Shown here in pieces: positions 29,319-62,868 of a stretch of 64,000 nucleotides of DNA. The notes below the pieces were generated by a model, which worked only from the letters and a program-made list of their open reading frames with translations, was not told where the DNA came from and ran no database searches. The position numbers were made by a program, and so were the translations under genes. Numbering within the stretch: the first letter of the stretch is position 1; every line of letters starts with the position of its first letter. Location: positions 124,001 through 188,000 of the IMG/VR virus record IMGVR_UViG_3300027782_000025. One strand, given 5' to 3'.

Positions 29319-30335
29319 TTATTTTCTGTCTGCTCCAATAGATGTAATGTGGTTGATATACCAATCAATAGTTATCTTGAGACCTGAGTCAAAGTCAGTG
29401 GTCGCTTCGAAATTAAATTTTAGCGCCGCTTGGGTACTATCTAAGCTTCTTCGGGGCTGTCCGTTTGGCCTAGAAGTATCATATTTTATTAGACCTTCGT
29501 ACTCCATTAATTGTGCTATCTTGATCGTTAAATCTTTTATACTTATTTCTTTTCCTGACCCAAGATTTATCGGCTCTGGATCATCGTAAACCGCTGTGGC
29601 TTGGACTATGCCTTTTGCAGCATCATCCACATATAAAAATTCTCTGGTCGGTGAGCCATCGCCCCATACTACGACATGGTCTGCTTTGTTTATTTTAGCC
29701 TCATAAACCTTTTTGATAATTGCTGGAATAACATGCGACGTGCTATCATCGAAATTATCAAGTGGACCATATAGATTAGCTGGTAACAAATGTATTCCAT
29801 TAAAACCATACTCTTGGCGATAGGCTTGGCTTTGTACAAGCAAAGCCTTTTTTGCAATACCGTAAGCCGCATTTGTCTCTTCTGGATAGCCATTCCAAAT
29901 ATCTGATTCTTTAAATGGAGATGCTGTAAATTTAGGATAGGAGCAGACAGTGCCGACAGTAACGAATTTTCTAACATTATGTCTTCTAGCATACTCCTGC
30001 ATCAGTATGCCCATCATAGCATTTTTATAAAAAAAAGACCCAGGCGTTTTTTGATTTGCACCAATCCCGCCGACAGCTGCGGCAAGATGAATAACGACAG
30101 TCGGAGACAATCTGCTAAATAATTCAGAAACATGAGATTCAATCGTAAGATCAAATAATACTGAGCGATTAATGTAGACATTATTAGGTTTAGCTTTTTG
30201 TCCTCTAACGAACTCAGAGCCAAAGCCATTTTCCATGAAGCATTGGGCAACTTTATTGCCCAAAAAGCCGGCGCCACCGGTGATTAGAATCGATTCTCGC
30301 TTTAAATTATTCGCCAAGCTTTCTTTTATATTCAT
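29319..30335 (-). CDS. fcl: GDP-L-fucose synthase (extended SDR)
   Basis: TGGAGFLG, HLAAAVGGIGAN, YPEETNAAYGIAKK, PANLYGP.DNFD, SHVIPA, WGDGSPTREFLYVDD. Start refined to 30335 behind AGGAG. Confidence 0.93.
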   Translation of the reverse strand: MNIKESLANNLKRESILITGGAGFLGNKVAQCFMENGFGSEFVRGQKAKPNNVYINRSVLFDLTIESHVSELFSRLSPTVVIHLAAAVGGIGANQKTPGSFFYKNAMMGILMQEYARRHNVRKFVTVGTVCSYPKFTASPFKESDIWNGYPEETNAAYGIAKKALLVQSQAYRQEYGFNGIHLLPANLYGPLDNFDDSTSHVIPAIIKKVYEAKINKADHVVVWGDGSPTREFLYVDDAAKGIVQATAVYDDPEPINLGSGKEISIKDLTIKIAQLMEYEGLIKYDTSRPNGQPRRSLDSTQAALKFNFEATTDFDSGLKITIDWYINHITSIGADRK

Positions 30336-30591
30336 CACGCTCTCTCCTTGTGGCTTCAAGATCAAACGACATATAATTCAAATCAGATACTAATGAATCC
30401 ACTTTTTCTTTAGCAAGTATCGCTAAACCTTTATGGCAAACGGCAATATCGCGCATAATTTTGCTAAAAACACTTCTAAGTTCGAGTGCTGTCTTAGAAG
30501 GCAATAAAGCAATCATTTCCTCTAACATCTTTATGTCTTCAAGGATAGCAGTGTACTTCTTATTGATTTCTGATAATTCATCTTCAGAAAT
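30307..30591 (-). CDS. Hypothetical coiled-coil protein, possible ATT start
   Basis: The frame is open from the AGGAG-N6-ATT at 30591; the first ATG (30528) lacks a Shine-Dalgarno. Confidence 0.6.
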   Translation of the reverse strand: MSEDELSEINKKYTAILEDIKMLEEMIALLPSKTALELRSVFSKIMRDIAVCHKGLAILAKEKVDSLVSDLNYMSFDLEATRRERDEYKRKLGE

Positions 30592-49679: not shown

Positions 49680-50045
49680 ATGGACAAGGCTTTAATGCAA
49701 AAAATGTTTATAAAACTTTTCTCTACTAGGCAAATAGCACACGTCGAACATCTAAAAACGGACATGTTCTCGGCGCATATCGCACTTAACGAATTGTATG
49801 ATGAATTATTAGGGTTAACAGATGAGTTAATAGAAACGTACCAAGGGCAATTTGGCCTGATTGAACCTATCGATAAATTATTCTTAGAATATGTTGACAT
49901 TATCGAGTATCTTGAATCATTTGCCTCAGAAGTAGCGAGAATTTCAGAAAAAATGCCGGAAGGATGCGGTCATCTTGGAAACATTATGCAAGAGATAGGC
50001 TCTTTAATGTATAAGACGATTTATAAACTAAAATATTTAAAGTAA
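49680..50045 (+). CDS. Ferritin-like four-helix protein (DUF5856-like)
   Basis: HVEHLKT..FSAHIALNELYDEL..LTDELIETYQG...IYKLKYL; AGGAG Shine-Dalgarno. Confidence 0.75.
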   Translation: MDKALMQKMFIKLFSTRQIAHVEHLKTDMFSAHIALNELYDELLGLTDELIETYQGQFGLIEPIDKLFLEYVDIIEYLESFASEVARISEKMPEGCGHLGNIMQEIGSLMYKTIYKLKYLK

Positions 50046-50597: not shown

Positions 50598-50607
50598 ATA
50601 TTTATAT

Positions 50608-52422
50608 TTAATTCCCAGATAGTATAGAAAATCTGTTAATTCTTTTTACCTTCAATTCCCTATCAAAAACATCAAACATTTGGTTACGGTGTGAAATAAT
50701 TAATATATTGTCGATCCTAGATGACAAATCATTTCTAATAATGCTAATAAGGCCTTCGATACCATCTTCATCCATCCTGCCATCGACCTCATCTAGTACC
50801 ATCAGATTACACTGTCTACCATACATTACTTCATAAAAATCATAAGATGCAAGCATGAAAGCAAGATCAGTTCTTTTCCTTTCGCCGCCTGACTGATATT
50901 CATAACCCCACATATTACTTGTTATCCTAAGGTCATTTTCGATCTTTATCTTAATGTCTAGACCAAGTATACCCAAATAATGTTCTAATCTTGAATTAAT
51001 ATATGGCAAGTGTTCTTCGCACATAAAGCTTTTAACCTTATTCCTATCATTATATGATTTGTATAAATAGGTATAATGCTTGTCTAAAACTGTAATGTCT
51101 TCTAAATCACTACTATGCTTTACAATATTGGCTAGAATGTCTTTAAGTCTACCATCCAACCGCTCAATGATGGTTTGATTTGGGTCGCAATCCGTTTCTG
51201 CTTCTGTCCTTAATAATGTTAACCTTTTAATCTCAGCTTTATAATTTAGAACTATTGTCGAAAGATTATTAGCTTCCATGATCGTTATGTTAGGAATTTT
51301 TGTGGCCAGCATCGCCTCATATTTTTTGATAACCTTGTTGCTTTCTTCTCTGGCAGCCGAAGCATCTAGCAGCTGTGTGTTAAATATCGATAATTCTTTT
51401 TCTATCTTATCTAAATTGTTAGTTATCATACTTGAAGGTATAGACTGTTGGCAAGCAACGCAACTCTTACCCTGTAGCTTATTAACCTCATCACGCCGCT
51501 TTTTTAAAACAGATAGATTAGATTCTATCGTGGCAATCGTCCTAAAGTGCCCAGCATCTTCAGACTTCAATCTGTCTATCTCGGCTTTAATCTTTTCTAT
51601 CAATCTCCATTTTTCAGTTAATTTGTCGATGTCAGGAATAGTTATACTACCGATTTTTCCATTTATAGTTTCGATCATGGAATCAATATCAGAAATCCTT
51701 TTAGCTCTTTTGATCTCATAAGCGCCACTTTCTTCACGATAAGACTCGATATCACTTATCGTTCTATCTCTATTGGCTTCAAGGTCTGTGATTTTAGATT
51801 TAATATTTGTGAATAGGAATTGGGCATTATCGGATTTAGCTTTTGCTATCTTGGCGTAAAAACTAAACCTATCGACTCTTAGTATTTTTTCAAGAGCTTT
51901 TTTCCTAGCCACCTCGCTCATTTCCATCCAAGACCGACCATATTGATTAAAGAAAACACTGCCACAAAATATGTCATAATCGAGGTTAAAAGTCTTATTC
52001 AACTGCGATTGCATAGCTTTAGATGTAGAAACAGTGTCGGCGGATATCCTTGTCTCGTCGCCATCTCTACTAAATAACACTTCTGTAGTGCCACCTTTTT
52101 GTCTTCGCCTTATAATCTGATCACCATTTTTAAAATCGATAATCACTTCACAGGTCTTGCCGGTAAAGTGATTAATTATAGAATCACCAGCCGATGAAGC
52201 GTGCATAGTTCGACCAAACAGTCCCCACAGCACGACATTTGGAATTGAGCTCTTACCTGAACCATTTGATTTGCGAATGTCTTCTGAACCGACTTGAGTC
52301 GAATTCCCAGTATCTATTTCACCTGTAATCAGACAACTCCCAGGGTCTTCAAGCGATAGCACCGATTCATAATCACCATAAGATAAAAAATTGCGCCACT
52401 TTACCGATTTGATTTCCAACAT
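50608..52422 (-). CDS. Recombination ATPase, T4 gp46 / SbcC / Rad50-like
   Basis: WRNFLSYG, Walker A SNGSGKSS, coiled coil with CVAC zinc hook, signature SGGERKR, Walker B LMVLDEVD, H-loop IISH. Confidence 0.93.
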   Translation of the reverse strand: MLEIKSVKWRNFLSYGDYESVLSLEDPGSCLITGEIDTGNSTQVGSEDIRKSNGSGKSSIPNVVLWGLFGRTMHASSAGDSIINHFTGKTCEVIIDFKNGDQIIRRRQKGGTTEVLFSRDGDETRISADTVSTSKAMQSQLNKTFNLDYDIFCGSVFFNQYGRSWMEMSEVARKKALEKILRVDRFSFYAKIAKAKSDNAQFLFTNIKSKITDLEANRDRTISDIESYREESGAYEIKRAKRISDIDSMIETINGKIGSITIPDIDKLTEKWRLIEKIKAEIDRLKSEDAGHFRTIATIESNLSVLKKRRDEVNKLQGKSCVACQQSIPSSMITNNLDKIEKELSIFNTQLLDASAAREESNKVIKKYEAMLATKIPNITIMEANNLSTIVLNYKAEIKRLTLLRTEAETDCDPNQTIIERLDGRLKDILANIVKHSSDLEDITVLDKHYTYLYKSYNDRNKVKSFMCEEHLPYINSRLEHYLGILGLDIKIKIENDLRITSNMWGYEYQSGGERKRTDLAFMLASYDFYEVMYGRQCNLMVLDEVDGRMDEDGIEGLISIIRNDLSSRIDNILIISHRNQMFDVFDRELKVKRINRFSILSGN

Positions 52423-53175
52423 TTATACAAGTTCTTTCATAAAATTCGGATGTGATTTAATATAATCAGGTAGAGTATTCTTGTCTATAGCTTCAGCATT
52501 CCAAATACCATTTGCTACTGGATGAAGATTTTGTATCTGATTTTCTGGCGTCCAACCATAATACACATCTTTTAACCAATTCGTACGTAATTCGTCCTTA
52601 TGACCATGACAAAGATATTTGTATTCCATCACTTCTTTACGCTGACAAGTGCCAAAATGATATATCTTAGTCGGCAAGCCATGTCCTTGGCCACCTGATC
52701 TTCTAAGATTAAACATCCTAATGGGGCTGAAACCATCTTTAACAACGTGGTTAAATGATCTCCAAAAATTGATATAATTGGATGTCCCATAAAGTCTATG
52801 TGGACCATCATAAGCCATTTTGACACCTTCCATAAAGGTTTCTTTATCTATGACTTCATCAGAATCAGCAGTAACGATCATATCGTAACCGGCCACATGA
52901 TTATAAACAGAGTGTCTATGAGATGCTTCCCTAGGATAAGAATCTGCTTCTTCCCATATCAGTTTATCACCAAGATTCTTGTGTGCTATATTAAAAATAG
53001 AGTCTCTTGAGTCTGGACATTGTACCAATTTACCATTAAAAAGTGGAATGTGACCGTGTGATGCCTTCTTTGAATATGATACATAAACCTTATCACAGAA
53101 AGGTTTTAAAGAATCTAAACATAAGTCTAAATATTCTGCGCCATAGTGAAGTGGTACAAAGCCGAGTATTTTCAT
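52423..53175 (-). CDS. GT-A fold glycosyltransferase (GT2-like)
   Basis: ILGFVPLHYGAEYL, DxD-like ADSDE, IYHFG. Confidence 0.75.
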   Translation of the reverse strand: MKILGFVPLHYGAEYLDLCLDSLKPFCDKVYVSYSKKASHGHIPLFNGKLVQCPDSRDSIFNIAHKNLGDKLIWEEADSYPREASHRHSVYNHVAGYDMIVTADSDEVIDKETFMEGVKMAYDGPHRLYGTSNYINFWRSFNHVVKDGFSPIRMFNLRRSGGQGHGLPTKIYHFGTCQRKEVMEYKYLCHGHKDELRTNWLKDVYYGWTPENQIQNLHPVANGIWNAEAIDKNTLPDYIKSHPNFMKELV

Positions 53176-53183
53176 GATGATCC

Positions 53184-53212
53184 TTGACGTGAGGAAAAAA
53201 CTAACTTATAAT
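53184..53212 (+). promoter_or_regulatory. Near-consensus sigma70 promoter
   Basis: TTGACG (53184-53189), a 17-nt spacer, then TATAAT (53207-53212), facing the + strand glycan genes. Confidence 0.75.
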
Positions 53213-53442
53213 TATAATACACCAGTGTTTATTCTACAATAGCGTTAACTATCGCAGGCATATGGTAATTACCACTCGATTTTCAATAAGTTATCGTCTA
53301 CAAGAATGAAACCGCTCTAGGAAATCTCAGAGATCATAGCCGTAAATACATCTCTTGGTTCGTAAATATATTACTTTGTTTTTTGATGCTGATTACAGGC
53401 AAAGCTGCCACCATTAGATCTTTTAGTAGGAAAGCATTTATA

Positions 53443-54189
53443 ATGAAAAAGTTTAATACGGCCTTAGTATGCACAGCCAAGAATGAAGATAATTATATAC
53501 AAGAATGGGTTGAATACTATATTAAACTTGGATTCGATAAAATATTCATATACCAAAATGATTGGAGATGTAGTTATGAGCATCCGGATGTTATAAAATA
53601 TGAATTAGACGGCTACGGTAAACAATTTGAAGTTTATAATACATTTATACAAAAACATCATGATGAATTCGAATGGGCCGCTTTCTTTGATGTCGATGAG
53701 TTTTTAGTCTTAAAAAGACATTCTAATATTAATGAATTTCTGGAAGAGTATAAACAATACCCAGCGATAGGCATAAGCTGGTATTTTTTTGGCGCAAACG
53801 GCCATGAAGTCATAGTAAACGATAATTACAGCGTTATTGATAGATTCACTAAGAGGAATGAAAGTCTTGATCTATATTTTAAATCAATAGTTAAATTAGA
53901 CAAAGATATGATTATGACTGCTCATAACAGAGTGGGTACGACATACTTTACAAATGGAATAGAAATAATAGACAAAGGTAGTGCTGAAGGTGGTACAGCT
54001 GAAGCCGCTCAATTAAACCACTATTTCGTTAAGACCATAGGAGAATTCGAGAAGAAGGTCGCAAGAGGGATGCCAAACCTAACACCAGACCACCCAGAAT
54101 ATATAAGGCCGATGAGTTATTTTAACCATCATAATAACAACGAGACTGAAGACCTCTTAGCATATAATTTTAAGCATGATATAAAATGA
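53443..54189 (+). CDS. Glycosyltransferase (GT92 / GT2_4-like)
   Basis: CTAKNEDNYIQEWVEYY..LGFDKIFIY, WAAFFDVDEFL, LNHYFVKT; start refined to 53443. Confidence 0.85.
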   Translation: MKKFNTALVCTAKNEDNYIQEWVEYYIKLGFDKIFIYQNDWRCSYEHPDVIKYELDGYGKQFEVYNTFIQKHHDEFEWAAFFDVDEFLVLKRHSNINEFLEEYKQYPAIGISWYFFGANGHEVIVNDNYSVIDRFTKRNESLDLYFKSIVKLDKDMIMTAHNRVGTTYFTNGIEIIDKGSAEGGTAEAAQLNHYFVKTIGEFEKKVARGMPNLTPDHPEYIRPMSYFNHHNNNETEDLLAYNFKHDIK

Positions 54190-54227
54190 CTATGATTTTT
54201 TTTTAAATATACAAAGCGAACATTATT

Positions 54228-54235
54228 TATAAATA
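54228..54235 (+). promoter_or_regulatory. T4-late-like promoter TATAAATA
   Basis: Exact TATAAATA 15 nt upstream of the FkbM ATG. Confidence 0.45.
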
Positions 54236-54250
54236 AACAGAGAGATCACT

Positions 54251-54832
54251 ATGAATCTTGTGCAAATTGGCGCAAACCGCGGTAACGACCATGTTACGGT
54301 ATTAATAAAAAACCATGAAATGCCATTCGATAAAATAATATTAGTCGAACCTATCATATATGTTTTAGAAAGACTAGCAAACTGCTATAAAGACTTAAAT
54401 AATGTTTTTATCGAAAACTGCATAATAAGTAACTCGCTAAAAAAGACCGAAACCATATACTTTCATCACGGCTATGATTATGAAACTAGCACACTAAACA
54501 GTAAGCATTTAATCGATCACGGATGTCCGGAAGATAGAATAGTGTCAAATGAAGTATCAAATATGACTTTAACAGACTTATTATCTAAACATAATATCAA
54601 ATTCATAAATTATCTATTCATCGATGCTGAGGGACAAGACATCGATATTCTTATGAGTCTAGATCTTGCTATAACACCTGTTGATTATATCCACTTCGAA
54701 ATTGCACATTCAGACGGTGTTTTTAAGCGTGGGCCTAAATTTGATGGTGTCTGTGCATATTTAAAAAACTTAGGCTATGAGCTTGCAATAACCGATACCG
54801 ATCTAACAGCAAAAAAGGCAATCACATGTTAG
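54251..54832 (+). CDS. FkbM-family SAM methyltransferase
   Basis: VQIGANRG, LVEP, TLTDLL..H.I..I.YLFIDAEGQDIDIL, IHFE. Confidence 0.88.
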   Translation: MNLVQIGANRGNDHVTVLIKNHEMPFDKIILVEPIIYVLERLANCYKDLNNVFIENCIISNSLKKTETIYFHHGYDYETSTLNSKHLIDHGCPEDRIVSNEVSNMTLTDLLSKHNIKFINYLFIDAEGQDIDILMSLDLAITPVDYIHFEIAHSDGVFKRGPKFDGVCAYLKNLGYELAITDTDLTAKKAITC

Positions 54833-55632
54833 CATGTAATATCTATGTCGACAACCAACAAGTTATAGAATACCCTGTATCATATATTATGCGTAATCTA
54901 ACTTTTGTAGACCAATTCATGGTATATGGTGGTGACGATATCAGTTACAATATTCTAAAAGATACTCTAAGTAATACGCCTAAAGTGCAAATTATAAACA
55001 TCGATAAAAAGATTAAGAATCCTCAAGACATAGCAGCAGCCCAGAATAAATGTCTGGAAAATACTTTTAATATGCTCAAACCAGATTTCATACTATCATT
55101 ACAGGCCGACATCTTGTTTAGTATTGAAGGTATTAGACAGATCCATGAATATATTTCTAATCCAACGGCGAGCAGCCTCTGTTTTAAAATCCAACACGTT
55201 AAACTATATATTAAATGCGGCATTTCCCACTTTGGTGCTGTTTTGCTAAATAGGGATTGTAAAGAAAGGTTTGTGCAGGATGGTGCCTATTTGTCTGCAG
55301 ACCCCCATAACAACGAGAATTATAAACACCATGACAATATCGCGTGCCATGATATAGGCTATTTATCGCCACAGATATGGGCAAAGAAATTAAAGCAGCA
55401 TGCTAAAACGTGGGGGTCGCCAAGCGCACTGGCAGACGCAATAAAATATGACGATAGTAATAAACTTGAATTCATCCTTAAATATAGCAAATACGTAAAA
55501 AAATTAGTCGGCTGCTTTGGGTTATTAAATAAAGAAGTCGATGCCGAATGGTATACGGTGATTGAAGATTTCGGTTTAGTCGAAGACTGGAAAGCGACAG
55601 TCGATATATTGAAAGAAGATTTTTGCAAGTAA
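54826..55632 (+). CDS. GT-A-like glycosyltransferase (divergent)
   Basis: FILSLQADILF in a DxD-like position, CHDIGY; island context. Confidence 0.55.
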   Translation: MLACNIYVDNQQVIEYPVSYIMRNLTFVDQFMVYGGDDISYNILKDTLSNTPKVQIINIDKKIKNPQDIAAAQNKCLENTFNMLKPDFILSLQADILFSIEGIRQIHEYISNPTASSLCFKIQHVKLYIKCGISHFGAVLLNRDCKERFVQDGAYLSADPHNNENYKHHDNIACHDIGYLSPQIWAKKLKQHAKTWGSPSALADAIKYDDSNKLEFILKYSKYVKKLVGCFGLLNKEVDAEWYTVIEDFGLVEDWKATVDILKEDFCK

Positions 55633-55662
55633 TTATCTTTATCATAAATATAGGGAAAAGAA

Positions 55663-56169
55663 GTGGGCGATTTAAAAATAGGGCAAGGATCATATGAAAG
55701 CATTATTAGACGTGGGACCCTTAATAGCATAACGATAGGAAATTATAGCTCTATAGCCGATGGCTGTATCTGCGATGGTGGTTTTGGCCATAACACTAAG
55801 TTTATCACGACTTATCCATTAAATGAAAAGCTAAAGAATTGTGCTCATCTAGCCGGTCACCCAGTATGTAGAGGAGATATACACATCGGAAACGATGTGT
55901 GGATAGGCGAAGGATGCATGATAATGAGCGGTGTTACAATAGGCGATGGTGCCGTGGTCGGGGCTAGATCTATAGTAACAAAAGATATTCAGCCATATAG
56001 CATAGTTGTCGGATCGCCGGCCAATATAACGAGGAAAAGATTTACAGACGAACAGATAAATAGACTATTAGATATTAAATGGTGGAATTGGAATGAACAA
56101 AAGATAATCGACAATGCTCATCTGCTGATGAGTGAAGATATTAACAGTTTTATAACAGCACACTCATAA
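55663..56169 (+). CDS. Hexapeptide-repeat O-acetyltransferase (CatB/Vat-like)
   Basis: IGNYSSIA, IHIGNDVWIG, GVTIGDGAVVGARSIVTKD..PYSIVVGSPA, RF......LL.IKWW.W. Confidence 0.92.
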   Translation: MGDLKIGQGSYESIIRRGTLNSITIGNYSSIADGCICDGGFGHNTKFITTYPLNEKLKNCAHLAGHPVCRGDIHIGNDVWIGEGCMIMSGVTIGDGAVVGARSIVTKDIQPYSIVVGSPANITRKRFTDEQINRLLDIKWWNWNEQKIIDNAHLLMSEDINSFITAHS

Positions 56170-56178
56170 GGGAATGAA

Positions 56179-56739
56179 ATGAAGCAAATCGTAAAGAATC
56201 TATTAGCGATGACTAAGAGTGCAATGTCTGATACCGACATCTCTAGAGATCTAGATAAAATCGACGGTTCATTCACTGCGGTGTATCAAGCACCAGCAGG
56301 GGTAGAACATTATAGATTATTATCATATATTAGTAGGCAAGTCAGCGGCAGCCAAATATTAGATGTAGGAACATATCGAGGGTATTCAGCGATAGCACTA
56401 AGCAATAACCTAAATAATAAAATTATTTCTTACGACATCCAGAAGCACCATACACAAGAAAATACAAGTAACACCGAATATAGAATCGGCGAAGCAACAA
56501 AATTCGAAGATTTCAAGAATACCTCAATTATTCTATTAGACACGTTTCATGATGGAGTCTACGAAGAATTATTCATAAACCATCTAAGGTCAATCAAGTG
56601 GGCAGGTTTACTAATAATGGATGATATTACTGAATTCCCTGAACTAAGAATTTTATTCAATAAATTGCCAGAAGAGAAGTATGACATATCTCATATAGGC
56701 CATTGGTCTGGGACTGGACTCGTGGTATTCGATAACTAA
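56179..56739 (+). CDS. Class I SAM methyltransferase
   Basis: ILDVGTYRGYSAIAL, ILLDTFHDG, LIMDDI. Confidence 0.8.
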   Translation: MKQIVKNLLAMTKSAMSDTDISRDLDKIDGSFTAVYQAPAGVEHYRLLSYISRQVSGSQILDVGTYRGYSAIALSNNLNNKIISYDIQKHHTQENTSNTEYRIGEATKFEDFKNTSIILLDTFHDGVYEELFINHLRSIKWAGLLIMDDITEFPELRILFNKLPEEKYDISHIGHWSGTGLVVFDN

Positions 56740-56756
56740 AACCTAAAGCGAGTTAA

Positions 56757-57365
56757 TTAATCATTGTTAAATAATGCGATTATCTTTTCTTTAAATTCAG
56801 AATAATAATCACACTTGTTTATCAGATTGTCAGAAGCAGCCATATATTCCTTATAAGATCCGACGCTAGCGTGGTACTTATTTATGCTAGGTTTTTTTCT
56901 TATTACAGCTACCCCGAAATCGCCAGTATAAGTTACAATCCCAATATTTGCTATATGTCTAATGTGCCATATCGACCTAAACACTGTTCCACACCTATAA
57001 GATACAGCAAAATCCTCGCTAGGCGGATAGGCATCGTGGAGAACTATTGCGCCATTTGGGTTTATATATTTCAAGGAATTTAAGATATCTTTTGTGACTT
57101 GCGCTTCATCATGGTCACCATCTATAAAAATCAAATCGAAATTCTGACCATTCTGATCAAAGAATTGATCACTATTCATCGACTTGATCCTATCATCGAA
57201 CATTTCCCCGACCGGCTCGACACCTACTTTATCTGCGCATACGATTTTATCCCAGCATACTTTACCTTGAACACCTATCTCTAAATAAGATTTAAAATTA
57301 TATGCTCTGATCAGATGGTTTATAATATCAACGTGAGTTATATCTTCTTTGAAATTAGGCTCCAT
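56757..57365 (-). CDS. Class I SAM methyltransferase (Methyltransf_24-like)
   Basis: YLEIGV, FDLIFIDGDH, GAIVLHD. Confidence 0.88.
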   Translation of the reverse strand: MEPNFKEDITHVDIINHLIRAYNFKSYLEIGVQGKVCWDKIVCADKVGVEPVGEMFDDRIKSMNSDQFFDQNGQNFDLIFIDGDHDEAQVTKDILNSLKYINPNGAIVLHDAYPPSEDFAVSYRCGTVFRSIWHIRHIANIGIVTYTGDFGVAVIRKKPSINKYHASVGSYKEYMAASDNLINKCDYYSEFKEKIIALFNND

Positions 57366-57979
57366 GCTTTTTTATCCTCCTCTATTATTGTGTTTGCTTC
57401 AGGTAGCAGACCTATACTACGACTCCAGTCCATGATGGCTTGAAGGTCGCTATAAACGGTCATTTTATAATCTAACAATTTAAGTTTATCAAATATCCAA
57501 TTATCGCCGAACCATAACTTTATCTCCCCAGGTATCGGATAAACTAACTCAACCATCTTGCGAGACAAGCAGATGAAGACGCCAGGGACGCCATCCTGCA
57601 CTACTTGTGTTGTCGGGTTGGGAGAATCGGAAAAGGCACTAACGCCAGTCACAAGCGGAATTACCTTCTGAGTATCAAGATCTATTAATTTTATCTTAGC
57701 ACAAACGTCATTTTTAAGATAAATATCGCTATTTAGGATAATTAAGGTATCGAACTCTGGATGTGCTAAGAAATACTCCATTAATTGATTCCAAGCTGGA
57801 TTAACATAAACATTCTTAGCATTAATTATTTTATTGTAAGGCTCTATTAATTTTTTTATGTCAGGTGTGGCATTATTGTCGATTATAAGGATACCGTCGG
57901 CACCAATAACATGGGCTAAGCATCTCTTAACACAAGCCACGTCATAAATTACAGGTATACCGACTAATAATTTTCTCAT
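57338..57979 (-). CDS. GT2-like glycosyltransferase
   Basis: LIIDNN, NVYVNPAWNQ, ILNSDI, LWFGDNWI. Confidence 0.8.
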   Translation of the reverse strand: MRKLLVGIPVIYDVACVKRCLAHVIGADGILIIDNNATPDIKKLIEPYNKIINAKNVYVNPAWNQLMEYFLAHPEFDTLIILNSDIYLKNDVCAKIKLIDLDTQKVIPLVTGVSAFSDSPNPTTQVVQDGVPGVFICLSRKMVELVYPIPGEIKLWFGDNWIFDKLKLLDYKMTVYSDLQAIMDWSRSIGLLPEANTIIEEDKKAWSLISKKI

Positions 57980-57988
57980 ACTGTATTT

Positions 57989-58639
57989 TTATTTAAGATC
58001 AAACCCATAAGCTGCATTCACAGCCTCATATTGGCGCGGCCCATGAAACCCAAAGCGCTTTTTAATATCATGATCATATTCAGGTATGTGTGATTCTATC
58101 GAAAACCACGTTGCTACATCTAAAGGCGCAAACACTATACCGTGTGATTCAAATAATGGCTTATTGACAAGGCAAATTTGCCAATCCTCATTATCCCAGG
58201 TACCGCCGTAATGCTTTTTACAAACATCTAAAAGCTTTTTACTACGCAGGCTAAACCCTCCATTACCTACTCGGCAGTTGGGTCTTTTGGTAGCTTCCAA
58301 AAGCCACGGTGCGCCTATATAATCATAATTTAAAAAATCAGGATTCCAATTAGCAGTGTTAAGAATAAAACCATCATGTTGAACAACAAGAACAAATTTA
58401 GTATTGATGTGGTCAGTAAGACTACCACTGATTAATTTACTATACTCACCGATAACCATTGGCTTTATTTTTTTATAGCCGACACCTGTGATATCTGAAT
58501 CGTAAGCCGATTGAAATATCACTTCACCAAAATCGACTTTATCAATGCATTGCCTAACAGCAAAAAGCGAGCTTTCAAAAGATTTTTTATCCGTGCGCCC
58601 ATCAGCCATAAACAATGTAACATTTTTTAATCGGAGCAT
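57989..58639 (-). CDS. DUF5672-like putative glycosyltransferase
   Basis: LVVQHDGFI...W...FLNYDYIGAPW, VGNGGFSLRS, NED, FAP..VA..FS.E, FGFHG. Confidence 0.85.
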   Translation of the reverse strand: MLRLKNVTLFMADGRTDKKSFESSLFAVRQCIDKVDFGEVIFQSAYDSDITGVGYKKIKPMVIGEYSKLISGSLTDHINTKFVLVVQHDGFILNTANWNPDFLNYDYIGAPWLLEATKRPNCRVGNGGFSLRSKKLLDVCKKHYGGTWDNEDWQICLVNKPLFESHGIVFAPLDVATWFSIESHIPEYDHDIKKRFGFHGPRQYEAVNAAYGFDLK

Positions 58640-58671
58640 AATGATACCTAAATGAATGGAATAAATTATAA

Positions 58672-59295
58672 TTACTGATTATTTTTGAGGTTACTATTGC
58701 TGAATTTAGTTAACCAAGTATATGCAGCGTTCTTATCATCTGGCGTTTTAATCTTAAAAGAATCAAAACGCAAAAACGGCTTAGGTAAGGATCTTGATAA
58801 AGTTTCATGAATGGATAAGGTGTTCCAATCGTGTTTACTAGGGTTAGTACAGAAAATATTTGCAGAGTCTTGCTCGGACTCTTTCGTACCAACATAAACA
58901 TGCTTTTTATCGGCTTTAGTGTCGGCCTGATTATGGTAGATCGGGGCACTTATACCTATAAATTCATGATTAAACAAAGGAATTTCGTCATTAATTATAA
59001 TATCGCCATCTAAAATTAGAGCCAATTCGTTTATTTCCTTAGAAATCAGCCGCATAGTGTGCATTATGCCTAGGTCAGGATCATTGTTTAATATAAATTT
59101 AATATTATCTAGCTTTTTTAAATGAGCTATTATGAGATTAGATCTGAATCCAACTACCACATATATTTCTTCATAATTCTTTAGGGCTTTAATTTGGTAA
59201 TCTATAATTCTTTTGCCATTCACCATGGCCATTGCTTTTGGAATATTTTGCTTTAATCTAGCCCCAAAGCCTGCGGCACATATCACGGCTTTCAT
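58672..59295 (-). CDS. Sugar-phosphate / choline nucleotidyltransferase (MobA/LicC-like)
   Basis: AVICAAGFGARL...PKAM..VNGKRII, YVVVGF, ILDGDI. Confidence 0.85.
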   Translation of the reverse strand: MKAVICAAGFGARLKQNIPKAMAMVNGKRIIDYQIKALKNYEEIYVVVGFRSNLIIAHLKKLDNIKFILNNDPDLGIMHTMRLISKEINELALILDGDIIINDEIPLFNHEFIGISAPIYHNQADTKADKKHVYVGTKESEQDSANIFCTNPSKHDWNTLSIHETLSRSLPKPFLRFDSFKIKTPDDKNAAYTWLTKFSNSNLKNNQ

Positions 59296-59379
59296 TATTA
59301 TCCTTTATAGTTAGACACGATATCTACATAACTATAAAAAATAATCAGATAACCGCGAATTAACACAAGAAATGCAGTG

Positions 59380-59994
59380 TTAAAGTTTTATGAAAGAGCC
59401 CCATAAAACACTTAAAAAATCTAGATATTTATACTTTTCAAGACCTACTGAATCTATGCTAGATTGAACCATGTTTAAAGAAGACTCGTGCACTTCGAAC
59501 CCAATACCATCCCAAAGTCCAGTCGATAATAATCTTGATTTAACTGCTGAATAATTTTCAGATTCATTAGGCGAATCAGCGAAGTCGTGTAACATAATAA
59601 CATCGCCTATCTTAAGAAATTTCGAAAATATATCGAATTCTTTAGTCTTTGCTCCACCATCACATAATATCAAAGTTTTATCTCTCGAAGCAATTAAAGA
59701 TGAAATAGAATCGATAATATCAGGAGAAAAGCAATCACAATATCTGATATTATCATTTACTTCATGGTTTTTAGGGATTTTGACATGCGAAGGTTCTAGT
59801 TCATAGGTAAGAAATAAAGCCTCAGGCCGCTTATTTTTATAAAGCCATACAGAAAATCCGCCGTTATCAGTTCCGATCTCTATAATAAGATCGAAATCTT
59901 TAATAACCACCGAGAATACTAAATCAGTACCAGGCATTTGCGCAGCGCCAACACCAACAAGATCGTTAAAATAATTAGTCATAGTAAACCTCAT
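59380..59994 (-). CDS. Class I SAM methyltransferase (CmcI-like)
   Basis: IIEIGTDNGG, LILCDGGAK..EF, GDVIMLHD. Confidence 0.75.
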   Translation of the reverse strand: MRFTMTNYFNDLVGVGAAQMPGTDLVFSVVIKDFDLIIEIGTDNGGFSVWLYKNKRPEALFLTYELEPSHVKIPKNHEVNDNIRYCDCFSPDIIDSISSLIASRDKTLILCDGGAKTKEFDIFSKFLKIGDVIMLHDFADSPNESENYSAVKSRLLSTGLWDGIGFEVHESSLNMVQSSIDSVGLEKYKYLDFLSVLWGSFIKL

Positions 59995-60007
59995 AAGATA
60001 AAGTATA

Positions 60008-61741
60008 TTATATATTTAAAGGTTGGTGTAAATGAACCTGCCTCAAACTAGAAATATCGACCACCGCTTCTTTAAACCACGCCGGAAACATCGCCTTGGC
60101 TTTTTTAAATAATCTCTCGAAAGACCCATCTATAATAAATGTGTCGGCATGATCTGCGTGAGACCTAACACTTCTACCAACGGATTGCACAAGCCTTAAA
60201 ACAGTAATCCAGTCATAATATTTATCATCTAATTTCATCCTCGCCGCCAACTGCTTATCATCATAGAAATTAGCAAAAGGCATCTTGCAAACGATCTGAA
60301 AACGGCTCAAATCATCCTTAAGATCAACGCCCTCATAAAGAGAAGGAGAAATAATGATGCTATCATGGGATAAAGCATGAGAGTCTAAAAGGTCAGACCT
60401 ATTAGGATAATCCTTAGAAGATCTAAAACGCTTCGAAACACTAGATTCACAATTCAGGCTAAGATACTCCATAATAGCGTTATTATGAGTATGAATAATT
60501 CCCCTTTGGTGGCCAAATTTATTAACGATAGCTTCGACTGACCTAACCAAAGGTGGACCCCAATCGACCATCTTATCCTTACCACCGGTCATTTGAGCAG
60601 CCGGCCAATAGTAAATCGGCCTATTCTCGACAGGAAAGCGATTCTTCATCCTAAGAGCAGCAACGTCAGACCTATCGACACCAACGGTGTTACAAAAAGT
60701 GTCGACATCAAGAATAGTAGCACTCATCAGAAGCACCTTGTTACCATGCCTAAAAATGAAACGCTCGGCAAAATCACCAACGATAACTGGTCTCAAGTTA
60801 AGCACACGGTATTCACCGACAGAAGGAGAAAACTTAATTTCGTGATCCATAACCCATTCGCAATCATCGAAATCATTATCCACAAACATTTCGATCTTGC
60901 CGGCAACACCCAGAAAGTCTCTAGCGGCTATATGGTCCTCATCTGCAATTGCGATATCCTCAAGCTCCTTAAAAACACCAATAATATTCTCATTTAAAAA
61001 CCATTGCTTATACTGATTAGGACTATCGAAAACCGGAAGGGCATAGCCACGTTCTTTTAAATCGATATCGCTAATCGTAACGTTAACAAAAGAAAGTATT
61101 TCTTGACCAAGATTATGTGCCTCATCGGTAATAAGTAGACTGCGGGGATCAACGAAACGATCTTTGGTAAAAGTGGTCTGATAGAGGAAAGAGCTAAAAT
61201 TCATACACAGAAATCTAGAATTGATCGCCTTATGAAGTTGCTCATAATAGGCACAGGCGCTGAAAGTGCGTCCAGGGGGCAAGAAAATATTCTCCTCTGC
61301 GTTCTCGAAGCAAAAGCGGCACTTAACGCCAGAGCCAAGCAAATTGGTCTTACAGACACCAACGGAGCAATTCCTAAAACCATTGTCGAGCTTGTTAATA
61401 TCCGAAGCGGCAAGGGTAAGACTCCATTTCTTTTTGCCTTTCATTCTTTCCCAGACGTCGCATTCATAAGCATTCCTGCCTTTAAGCTCCGTCACGATAG
61501 AGCCGTATTCAGATACTAACTGGTCTTGCAGTTGCTTAGTAGCAGTTAGCCAATACATATTATCGAAAAATTTAGCAACCGTCATCCCGATGGCAGTCTT
61601 ACCAGAGCCAGTGGGAGCTTCGATTATAACGATCTTTTTACCAGAATTAAAAGAATCAAGCACGAACTTGATAGCTTCCCTCTGTCCATCGCGGTAAGCA
61701 GATTTAACAAAGAATTTATCTATATCATCCGTATTATACAT
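60008..61741 (-). CDS. DinG/XPD/YoaA-family SF2 helicase with a Cys cluster
   Basis: EAPTGSGKT, LKGRNAYEC...C..GVC...C.FC...CAYY, DEAH, SATI, EGVDL, QSVGRSVR. Confidence 0.92.
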   Translation of the reverse strand: MYNTDDIDKFFVKSAYRDGQREAIKFVLDSFNSGKKIVIIEAPTGSGKTAIGMTVAKFFDNMYWLTATKQLQDQLVSEYGSIVTELKGRNAYECDVWERMKGKKKWSLTLAASDINKLDNGFRNCSVGVCKTNLLGSGVKCRFCFENAEENIFLPPGRTFSACAYYEQLHKAINSRFLCMNFSSFLYQTTFTKDRFVDPRSLLITDEAHNLGQEILSFVNVTISDIDLKERGYALPVFDSPNQYKQWFLNENIIGVFKELEDIAIADEDHIAARDFLGVAGKIEMFVDNDFDDCEWVMDHEIKFSPSVGEYRVLNLRPVIVGDFAERFIFRHGNKVLLMSATILDVDTFCNTVGVDRSDVAALRMKNRFPVENRPIYYWPAAQMTGGKDKMVDWGPPLVRSVEAIVNKFGHQRGIIHTHNNAIMEYLSLNCESSVSKRFRSSKDYPNRSDLLDSHALSHDSIIISPSLYEGVDLKDDLSRFQIVCKMPFANFYDDKQLAARMKLDDKYYDWITVLRLVQSVGRSVRSHADHADTFIIDGSFERLFKKAKAMFPAWFKEAVVDISSLRQVHLHQPLNI

Positions 61742-61764
61742 TTATCACCATTAAGGAACAAAAT

Positions 61765-62853
61765 ATGGCAAACATCGCAATAACGGCAGACATTCATTTA
61801 GGACTCACGGGCAGATTAAATGATACCATTTATGCACTAAAAACAATACGTTCATATTGTCAAGTAGCTAACATCGACATCGTCCTGATCCTCGGCGACC
61901 TCTTCCATGATAGAAAATATCTAGAGATAGATGTTTTAAACAAAGCGACAGAATTCTTTAACGAATGCAGAGAGCTAAAGCAGACATGGATCGTATTTCC
62001 TGGCAACCACGACATGTATCTCAGGCACAGCTGGAAATGTAATAGTTTAGATCCGATAAATGATAAATTAGTGGTTATTAACGATATAAAAGATCTTGTA
62101 ATAGAAGGAAGACATTTCCATATCTTGCCGTATATGACCAAAGAAAGCACATATCGCAAAGTCTTAGAATTACTTTCACAAAAAGCTGATGCCGAAACTA
62201 TACTTCTAACGCACATTGGTGTAAATGGCGCCACCTATAACACCTGCTTTACCCAAGCTTCGAATTCTTCTATAACATTTAACGACACACCATATAGGAA
62301 GATCTTCACTGGGCATTATCACAATAGGCAATCGATAGGGGATAGGGTATATTATCCAGGGTCCCCAATACCTTTCAAACACGATGAAGGCGGTATTCCC
62401 CATGGATTCTTGGTATTAGATACTGACACTTTAGAACAGAAGTTCGTTAACATCCAGAAAGCTGGTCAGAAGTTCTTCCCGACTGAAGCTCCACCACCGA
62501 ATTTTTATACCATCATTCACACAGATGTTAATTCGACATCTGAAGAAGTAATTAAGAATAACCACATTCGTGTCGTGTTGGGTGAAACCATCGCGGAGAA
62601 TGAGAAAGAATCGATTAGACTACTACTAGAAAACTACAATCCTAAAAGCATAAAGTTCATCACCCCGGTCGAAAAGATAACTGCTGGCAGAAAAGAAATA
62701 AAAACTTACGGCATCAGCGATTACTTCGACAGATGGATTAAAAAAGATAAAAATTTTAAAGAGCTTGATGATAAACTGATATTAAAACTAAATCAGGAAA
62801 TCATACAACTCGGCGATGAACAATACCTATCAGAATCCCAAGAAATAGAATAA
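61765..62853 (+). CDS. Recombination nuclease, T4 gp47 / SbcD / Mre11-like
   Basis: ADIHLG, GDLFH, GNHD, THIG, GHYH, YPGSP metallophosphoesterase motifs. Confidence 0.92.
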   Translation: MANIAITADIHLGLTGRLNDTIYALKTIRSYCQVANIDIVLILGDLFHDRKYLEIDVLNKATEFFNECRELKQTWIVFPGNHDMYLRHSWKCNSLDPINDKLVVINDIKDLVIEGRHFHILPYMTKESTYRKVLELLSQKADAETILLTHIGVNGATYNTCFTQASNSSITFNDTPYRKIFTGHYHNRQSIGDRVYYPGSPIPFKHDEGGIPHGFLVLDTDTLEQKFVNIQKAGQKFFPTEAPPPNFYTIIHTDVNSTSEEVIKNNHIRVVLGETIAENEKESIRLLLENYNPKSIKFITPVEKITAGRKEIKTYGISDYFDRWIKKDKNFKELDDKLILKLNQEIIQLGDEQYLSESQEIE

Positions 62854-62868
62854 GTGTATTATCACACA

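What the first reader, a model, noticed from the sequence alone, without database searches (positions are those of the whole stretch)
52423..59994. Eleven-gene glycan synthesis and decoration island
Seen: five GT-like genes, four SAM methyltransferases, an O-acetyltransferase and a nucleotidyltransferase, contiguous and arranged in converging blocks. Established: such sets build methylated or acetylated O-antigen, capsule or virion glycans. Inference: a self-contained pathway for glycosylating the capsid or fibres, remodelling the host surface (superinfection exclusion), or hypermodifying DNA. No flippase or polymerase gene is visible, which favours a protein or DNA acceptor over a lipid-linked polymer.
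Basis: partly seen in the sequence, partly recalled or inferred. Interest (0 to 1): 0.65.

Follow-up and report, generated by a model that had tools for sequence, protein, structure and literature searches.

The report
Jumbo-phage glycan-building gene island
An uncultured freshwater jumbo phage carries a real, conserved and intact 11-gene cluster of soluble sugar-adding, methylating and acetylating enzymes that probably builds a decorated fucose-type glycan; this kind of cluster is already known in large aquatic phages, and what the glycan is attached to remains unproven.

Summary
Window 52423-59994 contains eleven tightly packed, intact ORFs.
- Four are GT-A glycosyltransferases (g1, g2, g4, g8).
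- One is DUF5672 (g9). It is linked to glycan genes but not shown to be a GT.
- Two are clear SAM methyltransferases (g3 FkbM, g7 Methyltransf_24) and two are weaker calls (g6, g11).
- One is a CatB/Vat-class hexapeptide acetyltransferase (g5).
- One is a LicC/sugar-1-phosphate-type nucleotidyltransferase (g10).

The host element is a T4-like freshwater jumbo myovirus of roughly 390 kb. The island sits between its gp46-like (SbcC) gene and its helicase and gp47-like genes. It is syntenic in relatives with 62-81% amino-acid identity and is under purifying selection, but cassettes swap: g2 is present or absent, and g4-g6 are exchanged.

The island is not self-contained. An Fcl-like gene lies 22 kb away in the window. 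Gmd and a second GT cluster lie about 50 kb beyond the window on a 100%-identical contig.

None of the island or second-cluster proteins has a membrane segment. No initiating transferase, flippase or polymerase/ligase family, and no hydroxymethyl-pyrimidine pathway, was found in 274 kb.

Best reading: cytoplasmic assembly of a methylated/acetylated deoxyhexose glycan, most likely on phage (virion) protein. Host glycan remodelling is a serious rival; DNA is disfavoured. This is a new member of a known kind.

The parts
52423..53175 (-). g1, 250 aa: soluble GT-A glycosyltransferase of a virus-specific family. Invariant DxD-type D104/D106/E107. It abuts the gp46-like SbcC gene, which starts at 52422.
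53184..53212 (+). Sigma-70-like promoter match (TTGACG-17-TATAAT, 11 of 12) in the divergent g1/g2 intergenic region. Candidate early promoter for g2-g6.
   Evidence: Best-scoring site in 50000-63000; sequence read. This is a consensus match only; the region as a whole has no more such sites than shuffles.
53443..54189 (+). g2, 248 aa (the ORF opens at TTG 53383): GT-A glycosyltransferase, Glyco_tranf_2_4/GT92-like. A variable gene, absent from a close relative.
   Evidence: Pfam 3.1e-13 and 1.3e-9. AGGA-type RBS before ATG 53443. Absent in L004/L012 and in run X5. Present in L007-L009.
54251..54832 (+). g3, 193 aa: FkbM-family SAM methyltransferase.
   Evidence: Pfam Methyltransf_21 1.1e-12. 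TIGR01444 above its cut-off.
54826..55632 (+). g4, 268 aa: GT-A glycosyltransferase of a second virus-specific family, with a C-terminal helical extension. Part of the swappable g4-g6 cassette.
55663..56169 (+). g5, 168 aa: hexapeptide-repeat O-acetyltransferase of the XAT (CatB/Vat) class. About 45 aa shorter at the N-terminus than CatB/Vat and far below their equivalog cut-offs.
   Evidence: Pfam Hexapep 9e-12. NCBIfam CatB 132 bits against a cut-off of 350. PDB 6mfk 1.3e-34. phrog_16087 8.5e-48.
56179..56739 (+). g6, 186 aa: divergent class-I SAM methyltransferase (O-MT-like).
   Evidence: Methyltransf_3 3.7e-4, below cut-off. hhalign to the g7 family 92%. The gene at the same position in L007 is a Methyltransf_24 MT with 25% identity.
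56757..57365 (-). g7, 202 aa: Methyltransf_24 (TylF/CmcI-type) SAM methyltransferase. Overlaps g8 by 28 nt, and this overlap is conserved in distant phages.
   Evidence: Pfam 2.2e-10. The 28-nt overlap is kept in L007 and L010.
57338..57979 (-). g8, 213 aa: GT2-family GT-A glycosyltransferase with invariant N83-S84-D85.
   Evidence: 173 homologues, many carrying PF00535. Profile hits K4CP at 2.5e-5 and WrtF at 2e-3. Invariant columns.
57989..58639 (-). g9, 216 aa: DUF5672 protein. Biochemistry unknown; tightly associated with GDP-fucose-type glycan genes in viruses.
   Evidence: Pfam 2.3e-18. 508 relatives in IMG/VR. Among 150 neighbours: Gmd 13, epimerase 15, GT11 12, GT2 10. An Fcl-like gene lies within 8 kb in 18 loci. 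No PDB or GT-A profile match.
58672..59295 (-). g10, 207 aa: MobA/LicC-type nucleotidyltransferase that activates a sugar-1-phosphate or a phospho-alcohol.
   Evidence: Pfam NTP_transf_3 2.7e-11. NCBIfam archaeal GlmU/AglF N-terminal domain. PDB LicC 2.5e-8 and ST0452 4e-6.
59380..59994 (-). g11, 204 aa: probable CmcI/Methyltransf_24-like SAM methyltransferase (weak call). Found only in close relatives.
   Evidence: CmcI 0.0099 and Methyltransf_24 0.025. PDB O-MT Rv1220c 0.037. Only close relatives found in IMG/VR.
29319..30365 (-). Fcl-like SDR (GDP-L-fucose synthase-like), outside the flagged range. Probable donor-sugar supply for the island, together with Gmd beyond the window.
   Evidence: Pfam Epimerase 1.6e-52. 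NCBIfam GDPFucSynFcl 258 bits, next best 99. Homologues lie next to DUF5672 in 18 other viral loci. Gmd 1e-130 in L098.

Best explanation
The island is the core of a dispersed glycan toolkit in an uncultured freshwater T4-like jumbo myovirus of roughly 390 kb.

Proposed pathway:
- Phage Gmd and an Fcl-like enzyme, both encoded elsewhere in the genome, convert host GDP-mannose into GDP-L-fucose or a related 6-deoxyhexose.
- g10 activates a further sugar-1-phosphate or phospho-alcohol.
- Four soluble GT-A transferases (g1, g2, g4, g8), probably helped by the DUF5672 protein g9, assemble a short oligosaccharide in the cytoplasm.
- Up to four SAM O-methyltransferases (g3, g6, g7, g11) and an XAT acetyltransferase (g5) cap it with methyl and acetyl groups.
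- The phage encodes no membrane step, so the acceptor is most likely a protein. I favour the phage's own virion proteins, as in chloroviruses and mycobacteriophages.

What is shown: gene identities, solubility, conservation, cassette exchange, and linkage of these families in other phages. What is inferred: sugar identity, order of the steps, and the acceptor.
For: - Domain and fold assignments.
- The genes are intact and constrained. dN/dS is 0.03-0.18 against a close relative. Amino-acid identity is 62-81% against L007 with synonymous sites saturated, the same range as the flanking SbcC, helicase and Mre11-like genes.
- Synteny holds in three lineages, with g2 and g4-g6 as swappable cassettes.
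- The same families co-occur in other orders in distant phages: L010, L011, L101, L102.
- DUF5672 neighbours elsewhere are dominated by Gmd, epimerases, and GT11/GT10 fucosyltransferases. Homologues of the window's Fcl-like gene lie next to DUF5672 in 18 loci.
- The same phage carries the Fcl-like gene, Gmd and a second GT cluster.
- No TM segment in any of the 19 proteins. No PGT, Wzx or Wzy/WaaL family in 274 kb.
- g1 and g4 are structurally nearest to the peptide-glycosylating GT2 enzymes ThuS/SunS, and the g1 profile hits the flagellin O-GlcNAc transferase GmaR.
- In L101 the homologous module follows the HK97-type major capsid gene in one operon.
- Precedents: cluster O mycobacteriophages have an O-MT plus three GTs that modify capsid and tail tube (PMC11600133). 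PBCV-1 A064R/A061L build and methylate the capsid glycan (PMC9614988).
- Seven 100%-identical contigs from a lake metatranscriptome library fall in g2, g3, g5, g6, g8 and g10.
Against: - No glycan, donor or acceptor has been observed; everything about chemistry is inferred.
- In this phage the island lies among replication and recombination genes, abuts the SbcC gene, and has a sigma-70-like (early-type) promoter match. It is not in the structural module.
- Capsid adjacency was seen in one distant contig only. Structural genes are rarely near DUF5672.
- Soluble GTs can act on host undecaprenyl-linked intermediates, so missing membrane genes do not exclude a host-glycan target.
- Only about 70% of the genome was searched.
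- The g9 and g11 assignments are weak.
- RNA-library contigs may be DNA carry-over.
Confidence: 0.45

Rival explanations
1. Host-envelope glycan remodelling. The soluble phage GTs, MTs and acetyltransferase act on the host's own lipid-linked O-antigen, capsule or S-layer/flagellin glycan intermediates at the inner face of the membrane. Host transporters then export the altered glycan. This changes the cell surface during a long infection, giving superinfection exclusion, avoidance of adsorption to lysing cells, or escape from grazers.
For: - This is the standard, untested reading of the similar 'cell wall synthesis and modification' clusters of cyanomyoviruses S-SCSM1, S-SCSM2R and P-SSM2, which include Gmd, Fcl and fucosyltransferases (PMC9602691, PMC12801897).
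- The g8 profile and the g1 and g4 models match WrtF, a GT-A fucosyltransferase of a methylated/acetylated rhizobial O-polysaccharide (PMC12595478).
- The early-type promoter match and the placement with early/middle replication genes fit a function carried out during infection.
Against: - By my own knowledge, experimentally proven phage surface-conversion systems come from temperate phages and use membrane proteins (Gtr, Oac types). Here no protein has a TM segment.
- No PGT, Wzx, Wzy or WaaL family is present.
- The g1, g4 and g8 families are almost exclusively viral. Only 2 hits came from 185,579 species genomes, both on phage-like MAG contigs. That argues against recent capture from a host O-antigen locus.
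Confidence: 0.3
2. DNA hypermodification. One or more of the GT-A enzymes glycosylate a modified base in phage DNA, and the other enzymes extend or decorate the sugar. This would protect the genome from restriction and CRISPR.
For: - GT-A-fold phage enzymes that put mono- to trisaccharides on 5hmC are known (bioRxiv 10.1101/2023.12.21.572611).
- The island sits in the replication/recombination region between the gp46- and gp47-like genes. By my own knowledge this is where T4 carries its alpha-glucosyltransferase.
- There is an early-type promoter match.
- The phage already appears to alter its DNA, since it carries a PurZ-like gene.
Against: - No dCMP/dUMP hydroxymethylase (Thymidylat_synt family) or C5-cytosine methylase was found in the window record, the 274-kb identical contig or the 97-kb relative. 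A Tet/JBP search also found nothing, but it rang in no control genome and is uninformative.
- ThyX and dUTPase/dCTP deaminase point to ordinary dTMP supply.
- All 11 proteins are neutral to acidic, which is not typical of DNA-binding enzymes.
- Methylated, acetylated or deoxyhexose DNA glycans, and Gmd/Fcl involvement, have no precedent in the cited work.
Confidence: 0.1
3. The genes are not one pathway. The island would be a hyperplastic region that collects unrelated accessory transferases, each acting alone on a different target or inactive.
For: - Cassettes come and go: g2 is absent in one relative, and g4-g6 are swapped for a single MT in another.
- DUF5672 often occurs without recognisable homologues of the other island genes.
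- dS varies greatly along the island against a close relative, which indicates recombination.
Against: - Nine of the eleven genes are syntenic at 62-81% amino-acid identity, with divergence like that of the core genes.
- The 28-nt g8/g7 overlap is conserved.
- The families g1, g4, g5, g6, g8 and g9 re-associate in different orders in distant phages.
- All eleven functions belong to glycan synthesis.
Confidence: 0.1

Closest known systems
'Cell wall synthesis and modification' gene clusters of large T4-like cyanomyoviruses (S-SCSM1, S-SCSM2R, P-SSM2)
   Same: Both are large aquatic T4-like myoviruses. Both have many GT genes (13 in S-SCSM2R) with Gmd, GDP-fucose synthase, fucosyltransferases and epimerases. 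The acceptor is untested in both (PMC9602691, PMC12801897).
   Different: - There is no detectable DNA match, and no tblastn match of g1 or g8, to any of 50,697 GenBank phage records.
- Here the GTs belong to virus-specific GT-A families without Pfam coverage.
- Here the cluster is rich in methyltransferases (up to 4) and has an XAT acetyltransferase, a LicC-like nucleotidyltransferase and DUF5672.
- This phage is from fresh water and its host is unknown.
Virion glycosylation systems of mycobacteriophages (e.g. cluster O: an O-methyltransferase followed by three tandem GTs modifying capsid and tail tube)
   Same: A lytic phage encodes a compact set of soluble GTs plus a sugar O-methyltransferase and no membrane export genes (PMC11600133, citing Freeman et al. 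2023).
   Different: - No sequence relationship was shown.
- The host and phage lineage are different.
- Here the genes sit in the replication region, not beside structural genes. The exception is the distant contig L101.
- Glycosylated virion proteins are not demonstrated here.
Chlorovirus PBCV-1 capsid-glycan machinery (A064R with two GT domains plus an MT domain, A061L MT, virus-encoded GMD)
   Same: Virus-encoded cytoplasmic GT-A enzymes act with class-I SAM methyltransferases that O-methylate a terminal 6-deoxyhexose. The virus also encodes GDP-mannose dehydratase (PMC9614988).
   Different: That is a eukaryotic giant virus with multidomain enzymes and experimentally solved N-glycans. Here the genes are single-domain, in a tailed phage, with no chemistry known.
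Phage DNA glycan hypermodification clusters (T4 alpha/beta-GT; C5-MT/5mYOX-dependent GT clusters)
   Same: Phage GT-A enzymes related to TarP/JGT can build mono- to trisaccharides on DNA, and they lie in early regions.
   Different: Their defining partner enzymes, which make 5hmC or 5hmU, were not found here. No methyl, acetyl or deoxyhexose decoration is known on DNA.
Rhizobial O-polysaccharide synthesis with the GT-A fucosyltransferase WrtF
   Different: WrtF works on a lipid-linked bacterial O-antigen with host export machinery. Identity to it is only 11-12%, and its scores are tied with many other GT2 enzymes.

Membership tests
GT-A fold (GT2-like) glycosyltransferases: g1, g2, g4, g8 | Single Rossmann-like GT-A fold | tested here: met
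GT-A fold (GT2-like) glycosyltransferases: g1, g2, g4, g8 | Family HMM match above the curated threshold | tested here: inconclusive
   g2 meets it (50.5 bits against 27.5). g8 does not itself, but its full-length homologues carry PF00535. g1 and g4 do not match any Pfam, NCBIfam or PHROG model.
GT-A fold (GT2-like) glycosyltransferases: g1, g2, g4, g8 | Conserved acidic DxD-type metal/nucleotide-binding motif after the fourth strand | tested here: met
   g1 has invariant D104, D106 and E107. g8 has invariant N83-S84-D85. g4 has nearly invariant A94-D95. g2 reads DVDE in its sequence. Catalysis was not tested.
DUF5672 as a glycosyltransferase (g9) | Detectable homology or fold match to a known GT | tested here: not met
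   The profile has no PDB hit (best E 1.1). hhalign probability to the g1, g4 and g8 families is at most 3.5%. Association with glycan genes is strong.
Class-I SAM methyltransferases: g3, g6, g7, g11 | Family HMM above threshold | tested here: inconclusive
   g3 (48.9 against 22.7) and g7 (41.8 against 26.3) meet it. g6 scores 20.3 against 22 and g11 scores 16.1 against 23.2, so both fall short. g6 is supported by hhalign at 92% to g7. g11 against g7 is not significant.
CatB/Vat xenobiotic acetyltransferases as antibiotic-resistance equivalogs (g5) | NCBIfam equivalog score | tested here: not met
   132 bits against cut-offs of 350 (CatB) and 300 (Vat). g5 lacks about 45 N-terminal residues. 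It shares the XAT left-handed beta-helix class only and is not called a resistance gene.
Lipid-linked (Wzx/Wzy or similar) polysaccharide pathway encoded by the phage | Initiating phosphoglycosyl transferase, flippase, and polymerase/ligase | tested here: not met
   PF02397, PF00953, PF01943 and PF04932 are absent from the 274-kb identical contig and the 97-kb relative, and the controls rang. No TM segment in the island or second-cluster proteins. Only about 70% of the genome was covered.
Phage DNA glycosylation systems | An enzyme that makes the hydroxymethyl-pyrimidine acceptor (dCMP/dUMP hydroxymethylase, or C5-MT plus Tet/5mYOX) | tested here: not met
   PF00303 and PF00145 are absent with positive controls. 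PF12851 is absent, but its control rang nowhere, so that search is uninformative. ThyX is present.
GDP-L-fucose pathway (Gmd + Fcl) | Both enzymes present in the same phage | tested here: inconclusive
   Gmd is clear: PF16363 at 9.8e-131 on the 100%-identical contig. The second enzyme matches Fcl best, at 258 bits, but lies below the equivalog cut-off of 500. The product could be another GDP-6-deoxyhexose.
Virus-encoded virion-protein glycosylation (mycobacteriophage/chlorovirus type) | Glycan demonstrably attached to structural proteins | not testable with these tools
   This needs virions. Indirect evidence only: soluble enzymes, no membrane genes, and capsid-adjacent homologous modules in L101.

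The most novel reading that the evidence does not exclude
A freshwater jumbo phage coats its own virion proteins with a methylated, acetylated fucose-type oligosaccharide. The glycan would be made entirely by soluble, virus-specific GT-A enzymes plus DUF5672, which would be a new glycan-acting enzyme family. This would be a prokaryotic-virus counterpart of the chlorovirus/mimivirus 'autonomous glycosylation' machinery. The swappable cassettes (g2; g4-g6) would give strain-level glycan serotypes.
Probability: 0.35. Interest if true: 0.7.

Novelty: new member of a known kind. Interest (0 to 1): 0.42.

Why it matters
Glycan gene clusters are common in large aquatic phages, yet none has an experimentally known acceptor outside the mycobacteriophages and the T-even DNA systems.

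This island offers a compact, conserved and apparently complete set of soluble enzymes. With Gmd and the Fcl-like gene from the same genome, it could be reconstituted in E. coli to find the product and the acceptor.

It also links DUF5672, which has 508 relatives in IMG/VR, and two virus-specific GT-A families that Pfam does not cover to GDP-fucose-type glycan synthesis. That gives these unknown proteins a testable role.

Strain-level cassette exchange suggests the glycan is under diversifying pressure. This is expected if it faces the outside world, for example receptors, grazers or host defences.

Tried and rejected
- **GenBank phage searches.** blastn of the island against 50,697 records gave no match. 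tblastn of g1 and g8 gave none at 1e-5. No cultured relative could be used. The sheath and SbcC proteins reach only 25-41% identity to cultured phages.
- **Single-sequence PDB searches.** g1, g4 and g8 found nothing. Profiles and AF2 models were needed.
- **DUF5672.** The PDB profile search and hhalign against the three GT-A families do not show it to be a GT.
- **g11.** A search for more relatives found only the same phage group. hhalign to g7 was not significant. The MT call stays weak.
- **T4 late-promoter motif.** TATAAATA occurs 11 times against 10.96 expected. No timing inference is possible, and sigma-70-like sites overall are no more frequent than in shuffles.
- **g1-family context in cellular genomes.** Only two hits, both on phage-like MAG contigs, so there is no bacterial operon context to borrow.
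- **Structural-gene adjacency of DUF5672 loci.** It is rare: sheath in L056, baseplate in L023, capsid in L101. It is anecdotal support only.
- **Tet/JBP family search.** It rang in no control genome, so its negative result is not informative.

Full report
**Context.** The window is part of a 75-kb IMG/VR virus record.
- A 274,625-bp contig (IMGVR_UViG_3300027782_000025, CheckV about 70% complete) is 100% identical over the compared region. Its coordinate equals the window coordinate plus 124,000. This implies a genome of roughly 390 kb.
- The window encodes a T4-type tail sheath, baseplate J/V/hub proteins, gp15-like protein, primase, an intein-containing class II RNR, ThyX, a PurZ-like enzyme, NucS, a gp46-like SbcC, an XPD-like helicase and a gp47/Mre11-like phosphoesterase.
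- Hallmark proteins are only 25-41% identical to those of any cultured phage.
- The DNA occurs in freshwater and lake metagenomes from many studies.
- The element is therefore an uncultured freshwater jumbo myovirus.

**The observation.** Eleven ORFs fill 52423-59994 with almost no spacing. They are g1 on the minus strand, g2-g6 on the plus strand, and g7-g11 on the minus strand.
- Direct family hits identify six genes:
  - g2 is GT2_4/GT92.
  - g3 is an FkbM methyltransferase.
  - g5 is an XAT-class hexapeptide acetyltransferase. Its best PDB match is CatB at 1e-34, but it scores far below the resistance equivalog cut-offs.
  - g7 is Methyltransf_24.
  - g9 is DUF5672.
  - g10 is an NTP_transf_3 nucleotidyltransferase. 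Its nearest solved relative is the phosphocholine cytidylyltransferase LicC, followed by sugar-1-phosphate enzymes.
- g8 has no Pfam hit itself, but 173 full-length homologues do, many carrying PF00535. Its profile reaches chondroitin polymerase and WrtF.
- g1 and g4 had no family hit anywhere.
  - With alignments of 39 and 57 relatives, AlphaFold gave models at pLDDT 96.
  - Among viral models, g1 matches phage proteins labelled GT17 or Fringe-like, TM 0.67-0.69.
  - Conserved acidic motifs sit where DxD is expected.
- g6 is a divergent class-I methyltransferase: sub-threshold Pfam hits and hhalign 92% to g7.
- g11 is only weakly MT-like.
- g9 could not be shown to be a GT.

**Are the genes alive?** All eleven are intact.
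- Against a close relative (IMGVR_UViG_3300027733_000040), dN/dS is 0.03-0.18 wherever there is enough divergence.
- Against lake-metagenome contigs about 70% identical (L007-L009), synonymous sites are saturated. Proteins stay 62-81% identical, the same range as the flanking SbcC (64%), helicase (73%) and Mre11-like (80%) genes.
- A lake metatranscriptome library contains seven 100%-identical contigs inside g2, g3, g5, g6, g8 and g10. This is suggestive of expression, but DNA carry-over is not excluded.

**Architecture and variability.** The island keeps its place between the SbcC and helicase/Mre11-like genes in all relatives, but its content is modular.
- g2 is missing from one close relative and from a 45-kb contig in run X5.
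- In the 70%-identity lineage, g4, g5 and g6 are replaced by a single different Methyltransf_24 gene.
- dS against the close relative ranges from 0 (g7-g11) to 0.84 (g1), so the region is a recombination mosaic.
- A 28-nt overlap between g8 and g7 is preserved in phages as distant as 50% identity.
- In unrelated contigs the same families re-associate in other orders:
  - L010 has g1, g8, g7 and g9.
  - L101 has g1, g9 and g6.
  - L102 has g1, g9, g5, g4 and g8.
- A Glyco_trans_1_2 gene usually lies just upstream of g1 in those contigs.
- This recurrent linkage argues for one pathway rather than a junkyard of accessory genes.

**The island is not self-contained.**
- An SDR at window 29319-30365 matches GDP-L-fucose synthase far better than any other NCBIfam model: 258 bits against 99 for the next. 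It is still below the equivalog cut-off.
- On the identical long contig, about 50 kb beyond the window, a second cluster sits beside gp32. It holds:
  - GDP-mannose 4,6-dehydratase (1e-130);
  - a 654-aa double GT2;
  - a Glyco_trans_1_2 gene;
  - a Glyco_tranf_2_5 gene.
- DUF5672 has 508 relatives in IMG/VR. Of 150 immediate neighbours in about 40 non-redundant contigs, the counts are Gmd 13, NAD-epimerase/dehydratases 15, GT11 fucosyltransferases 12, GT2 10, DegT aminotransferases 7, GT17 6 and GT34 6, with several methyltransferases.
- Homologues of the window's Fcl-like gene lie within 8 kb of DUF5672 in 18 loci.
- The most economical reading is a fucose-type (6-deoxyhexose) glycan capped by O-methyl and O-acetyl groups. 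By my own knowledge, FkbM- and TylF/CmcI-type enzymes are typical sugar O-methyltransferases.

**Which acceptor?**
- *Membrane steps.* None of the 11 island proteins or the 8 second-cluster proteins has a plausible TM segment: maximum 19-residue hydropathy is 1.61, at a Rossmann strand. The 274-kb contig lacks Bac_transf, Glycos_transf_4, Wzx-type and Wzy/WaaL-type families, with positive controls. The phage encodes no membrane step of its own.
- *DNA.* The DNA route lacks its defining partner. No thymidylate-synthase-type hydroxymethylase or C5-methylase was found. The Tet/JBP search was uninformative because its controls were silent. ThyX and dUTPase/dCTP-deaminase genes are present, and all enzymes are neutral to acidic. 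GT-A DNA glycosyltransferases do exist, and the island's place among replication genes would fit, so I keep this rival at about 0.1.
- *Protein versus host lipid-linked glycan.* The evidence here is circumstantial.
  - For protein: the nearest structures to g1 and g4 are the peptide S-glycosyltransferases ThuS/SunS, and the g1 profile hits the flagellin O-GlcNAc transferase GmaR.
  - For protein: in L101 the homologous module follows an HK97-type major capsid gene in one operon.
  - For protein: the experimentally resolved lytic-virus systems I can cite with soluble GTs plus sugar methyltransferases decorate virions. These are cluster O mycobacteriophages (PMC11600133) and PBCV-1 (PMC9614988).
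  - For a host glycan: the matches to WrtF and TarS/TarP are statistically tied with ThuS/SunS.
  - For a host glycan: the island has an early-type promoter match (53184-53212, 11 of 12) and is contiguous with the SbcC gene.
  - For a host glycan: capsid adjacency is rare.
  - For a host glycan: host-surface remodelling is the usual, untested reading of the similar cyanophage clusters (PMC9602691, PMC12801897).
- *Weights.* I put about 0.45 on phage/virion protein, 0.3 on host glycoconjugate, 0.1 on DNA and 0.1 on 'not one pathway'.

**Comparison and novelty.**
- Clusters of GTs with Gmd/Fcl in large aquatic myoviruses are already described, so this is a new member of a known kind.
- Three things are new in detail:
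  - two virus-specific GT-A families without Pfam coverage (g1, g4);
  - the tight association of DUF5672 with GDP-fucose-type glycan genes across hundreds of viral contigs;
  - strain-level cassette exchange inside a positionally fixed island of a freshwater jumbo phage.
- None of this is surprising to a specialist, but it gives a compact, reconstitutable system for an open question: what do phage glycan clusters glycosylate?

**Limits.**
- There is no chemistry, no host and no cultured relative.
- About 30% of the genome is unseen.
- g9 was not folded.
- Promoter and terminator calls are consensus matches only.
- RNA evidence comes from assembled contigs, not strand-specific reads.

Noticed in passing
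window 41017-42216 (-): PurZ-like adenylosuccinate-synthetase homologue. NCBIfam PurZ scores 228.8 bits, below the cut-off of 300 but above PurA models; PHROG 1211 scores 1.9e-63. The phage may replace adenine with 2-aminoadenine (Z). The adjacent ORFs 40251-41063 and 42496-43197 have no Pfam hit; DatZ and MazZ were not searched for.
   Followed up: partly
window 29319-30365 (-), with 28521-29318 (-) and 27968-28528 (-): An Fcl-like GDP-6-deoxyhexose synthase sits directly beside ThyX and a dUTPase/dCTP-deaminase gene. This places a glycan-precursor gene inside a nucleotide-metabolism block, 22 kb from the island.
   Followed up: yes
L098 5997-13813 (= identical contig G001 231,997-239,813, outside the window): A second glycan cluster of the same phage lies beside gp32. 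It holds a 654-aa double GT2 (with a Glyco_transf_7C-like part), Glyco_trans_1_2, Glyco_tranf_2_5, four unassigned ORFs and GDP-mannose 4,6-dehydratase.
   Followed up: partly
window 976-4356 (-): Class II (B12-dependent) ribonucleotide reductase interrupted by an intein with Hint and LAGLIDADG homing-endonuclease domains.
   Followed up: no
window 49016-49630 (-): A complete NucS endonuclease (N- and C-terminal domains) encoded by a phage, near the gp46-like SbcC gene. By my own knowledge NucS is better known from archaea and actinobacteria.
   Followed up: no
window 22344-25235 (-); 11257-15936 (-); 33108-39056 (-): The tail sheath is 963 aa, with the sheath domains only in the last ~300 residues and an unassigned N-terminal extension of about 650 aa. 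Two giant ORFs of 1,559 and 1,982 aa also lack assignment: the first had no meaningful Pfam match and the second was not scanned.
   Followed up: no
L101 3764-10220 (MAG contig labelled Saprospiraceae): The contig is evidently phage. An HK97-type major capsid gene is followed in one operon by Glyco_trans_1_2, a g1-like GT, DUF5672, a g6-like MT and a GT4. The bin label should not be taken as the host. L102, labelled Methylococcaceae, carries a similar module.
   Followed up: partly
window 55663-56169 (+): The XAT acetyltransferase g5 resembles CatB/Vat antibiotic acetyltransferases (PDB 1e-34). It lacks their N-terminal ~45 residues and scores well under the NCBIfam resistance cut-offs, so automated pipelines could mislabel it as a resistance gene.
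   Followed up: yes
window 56866-56890 (+) and 54228-54235 (+): A terminator-like hairpin for the plus-strand block lies inside the 3' end of the converging gene g7. A lone TATAAATA (T4 late-promoter consensus) sits 16 nt before the g3 start, but the motif is not enriched in the window.
   Followed up: partly
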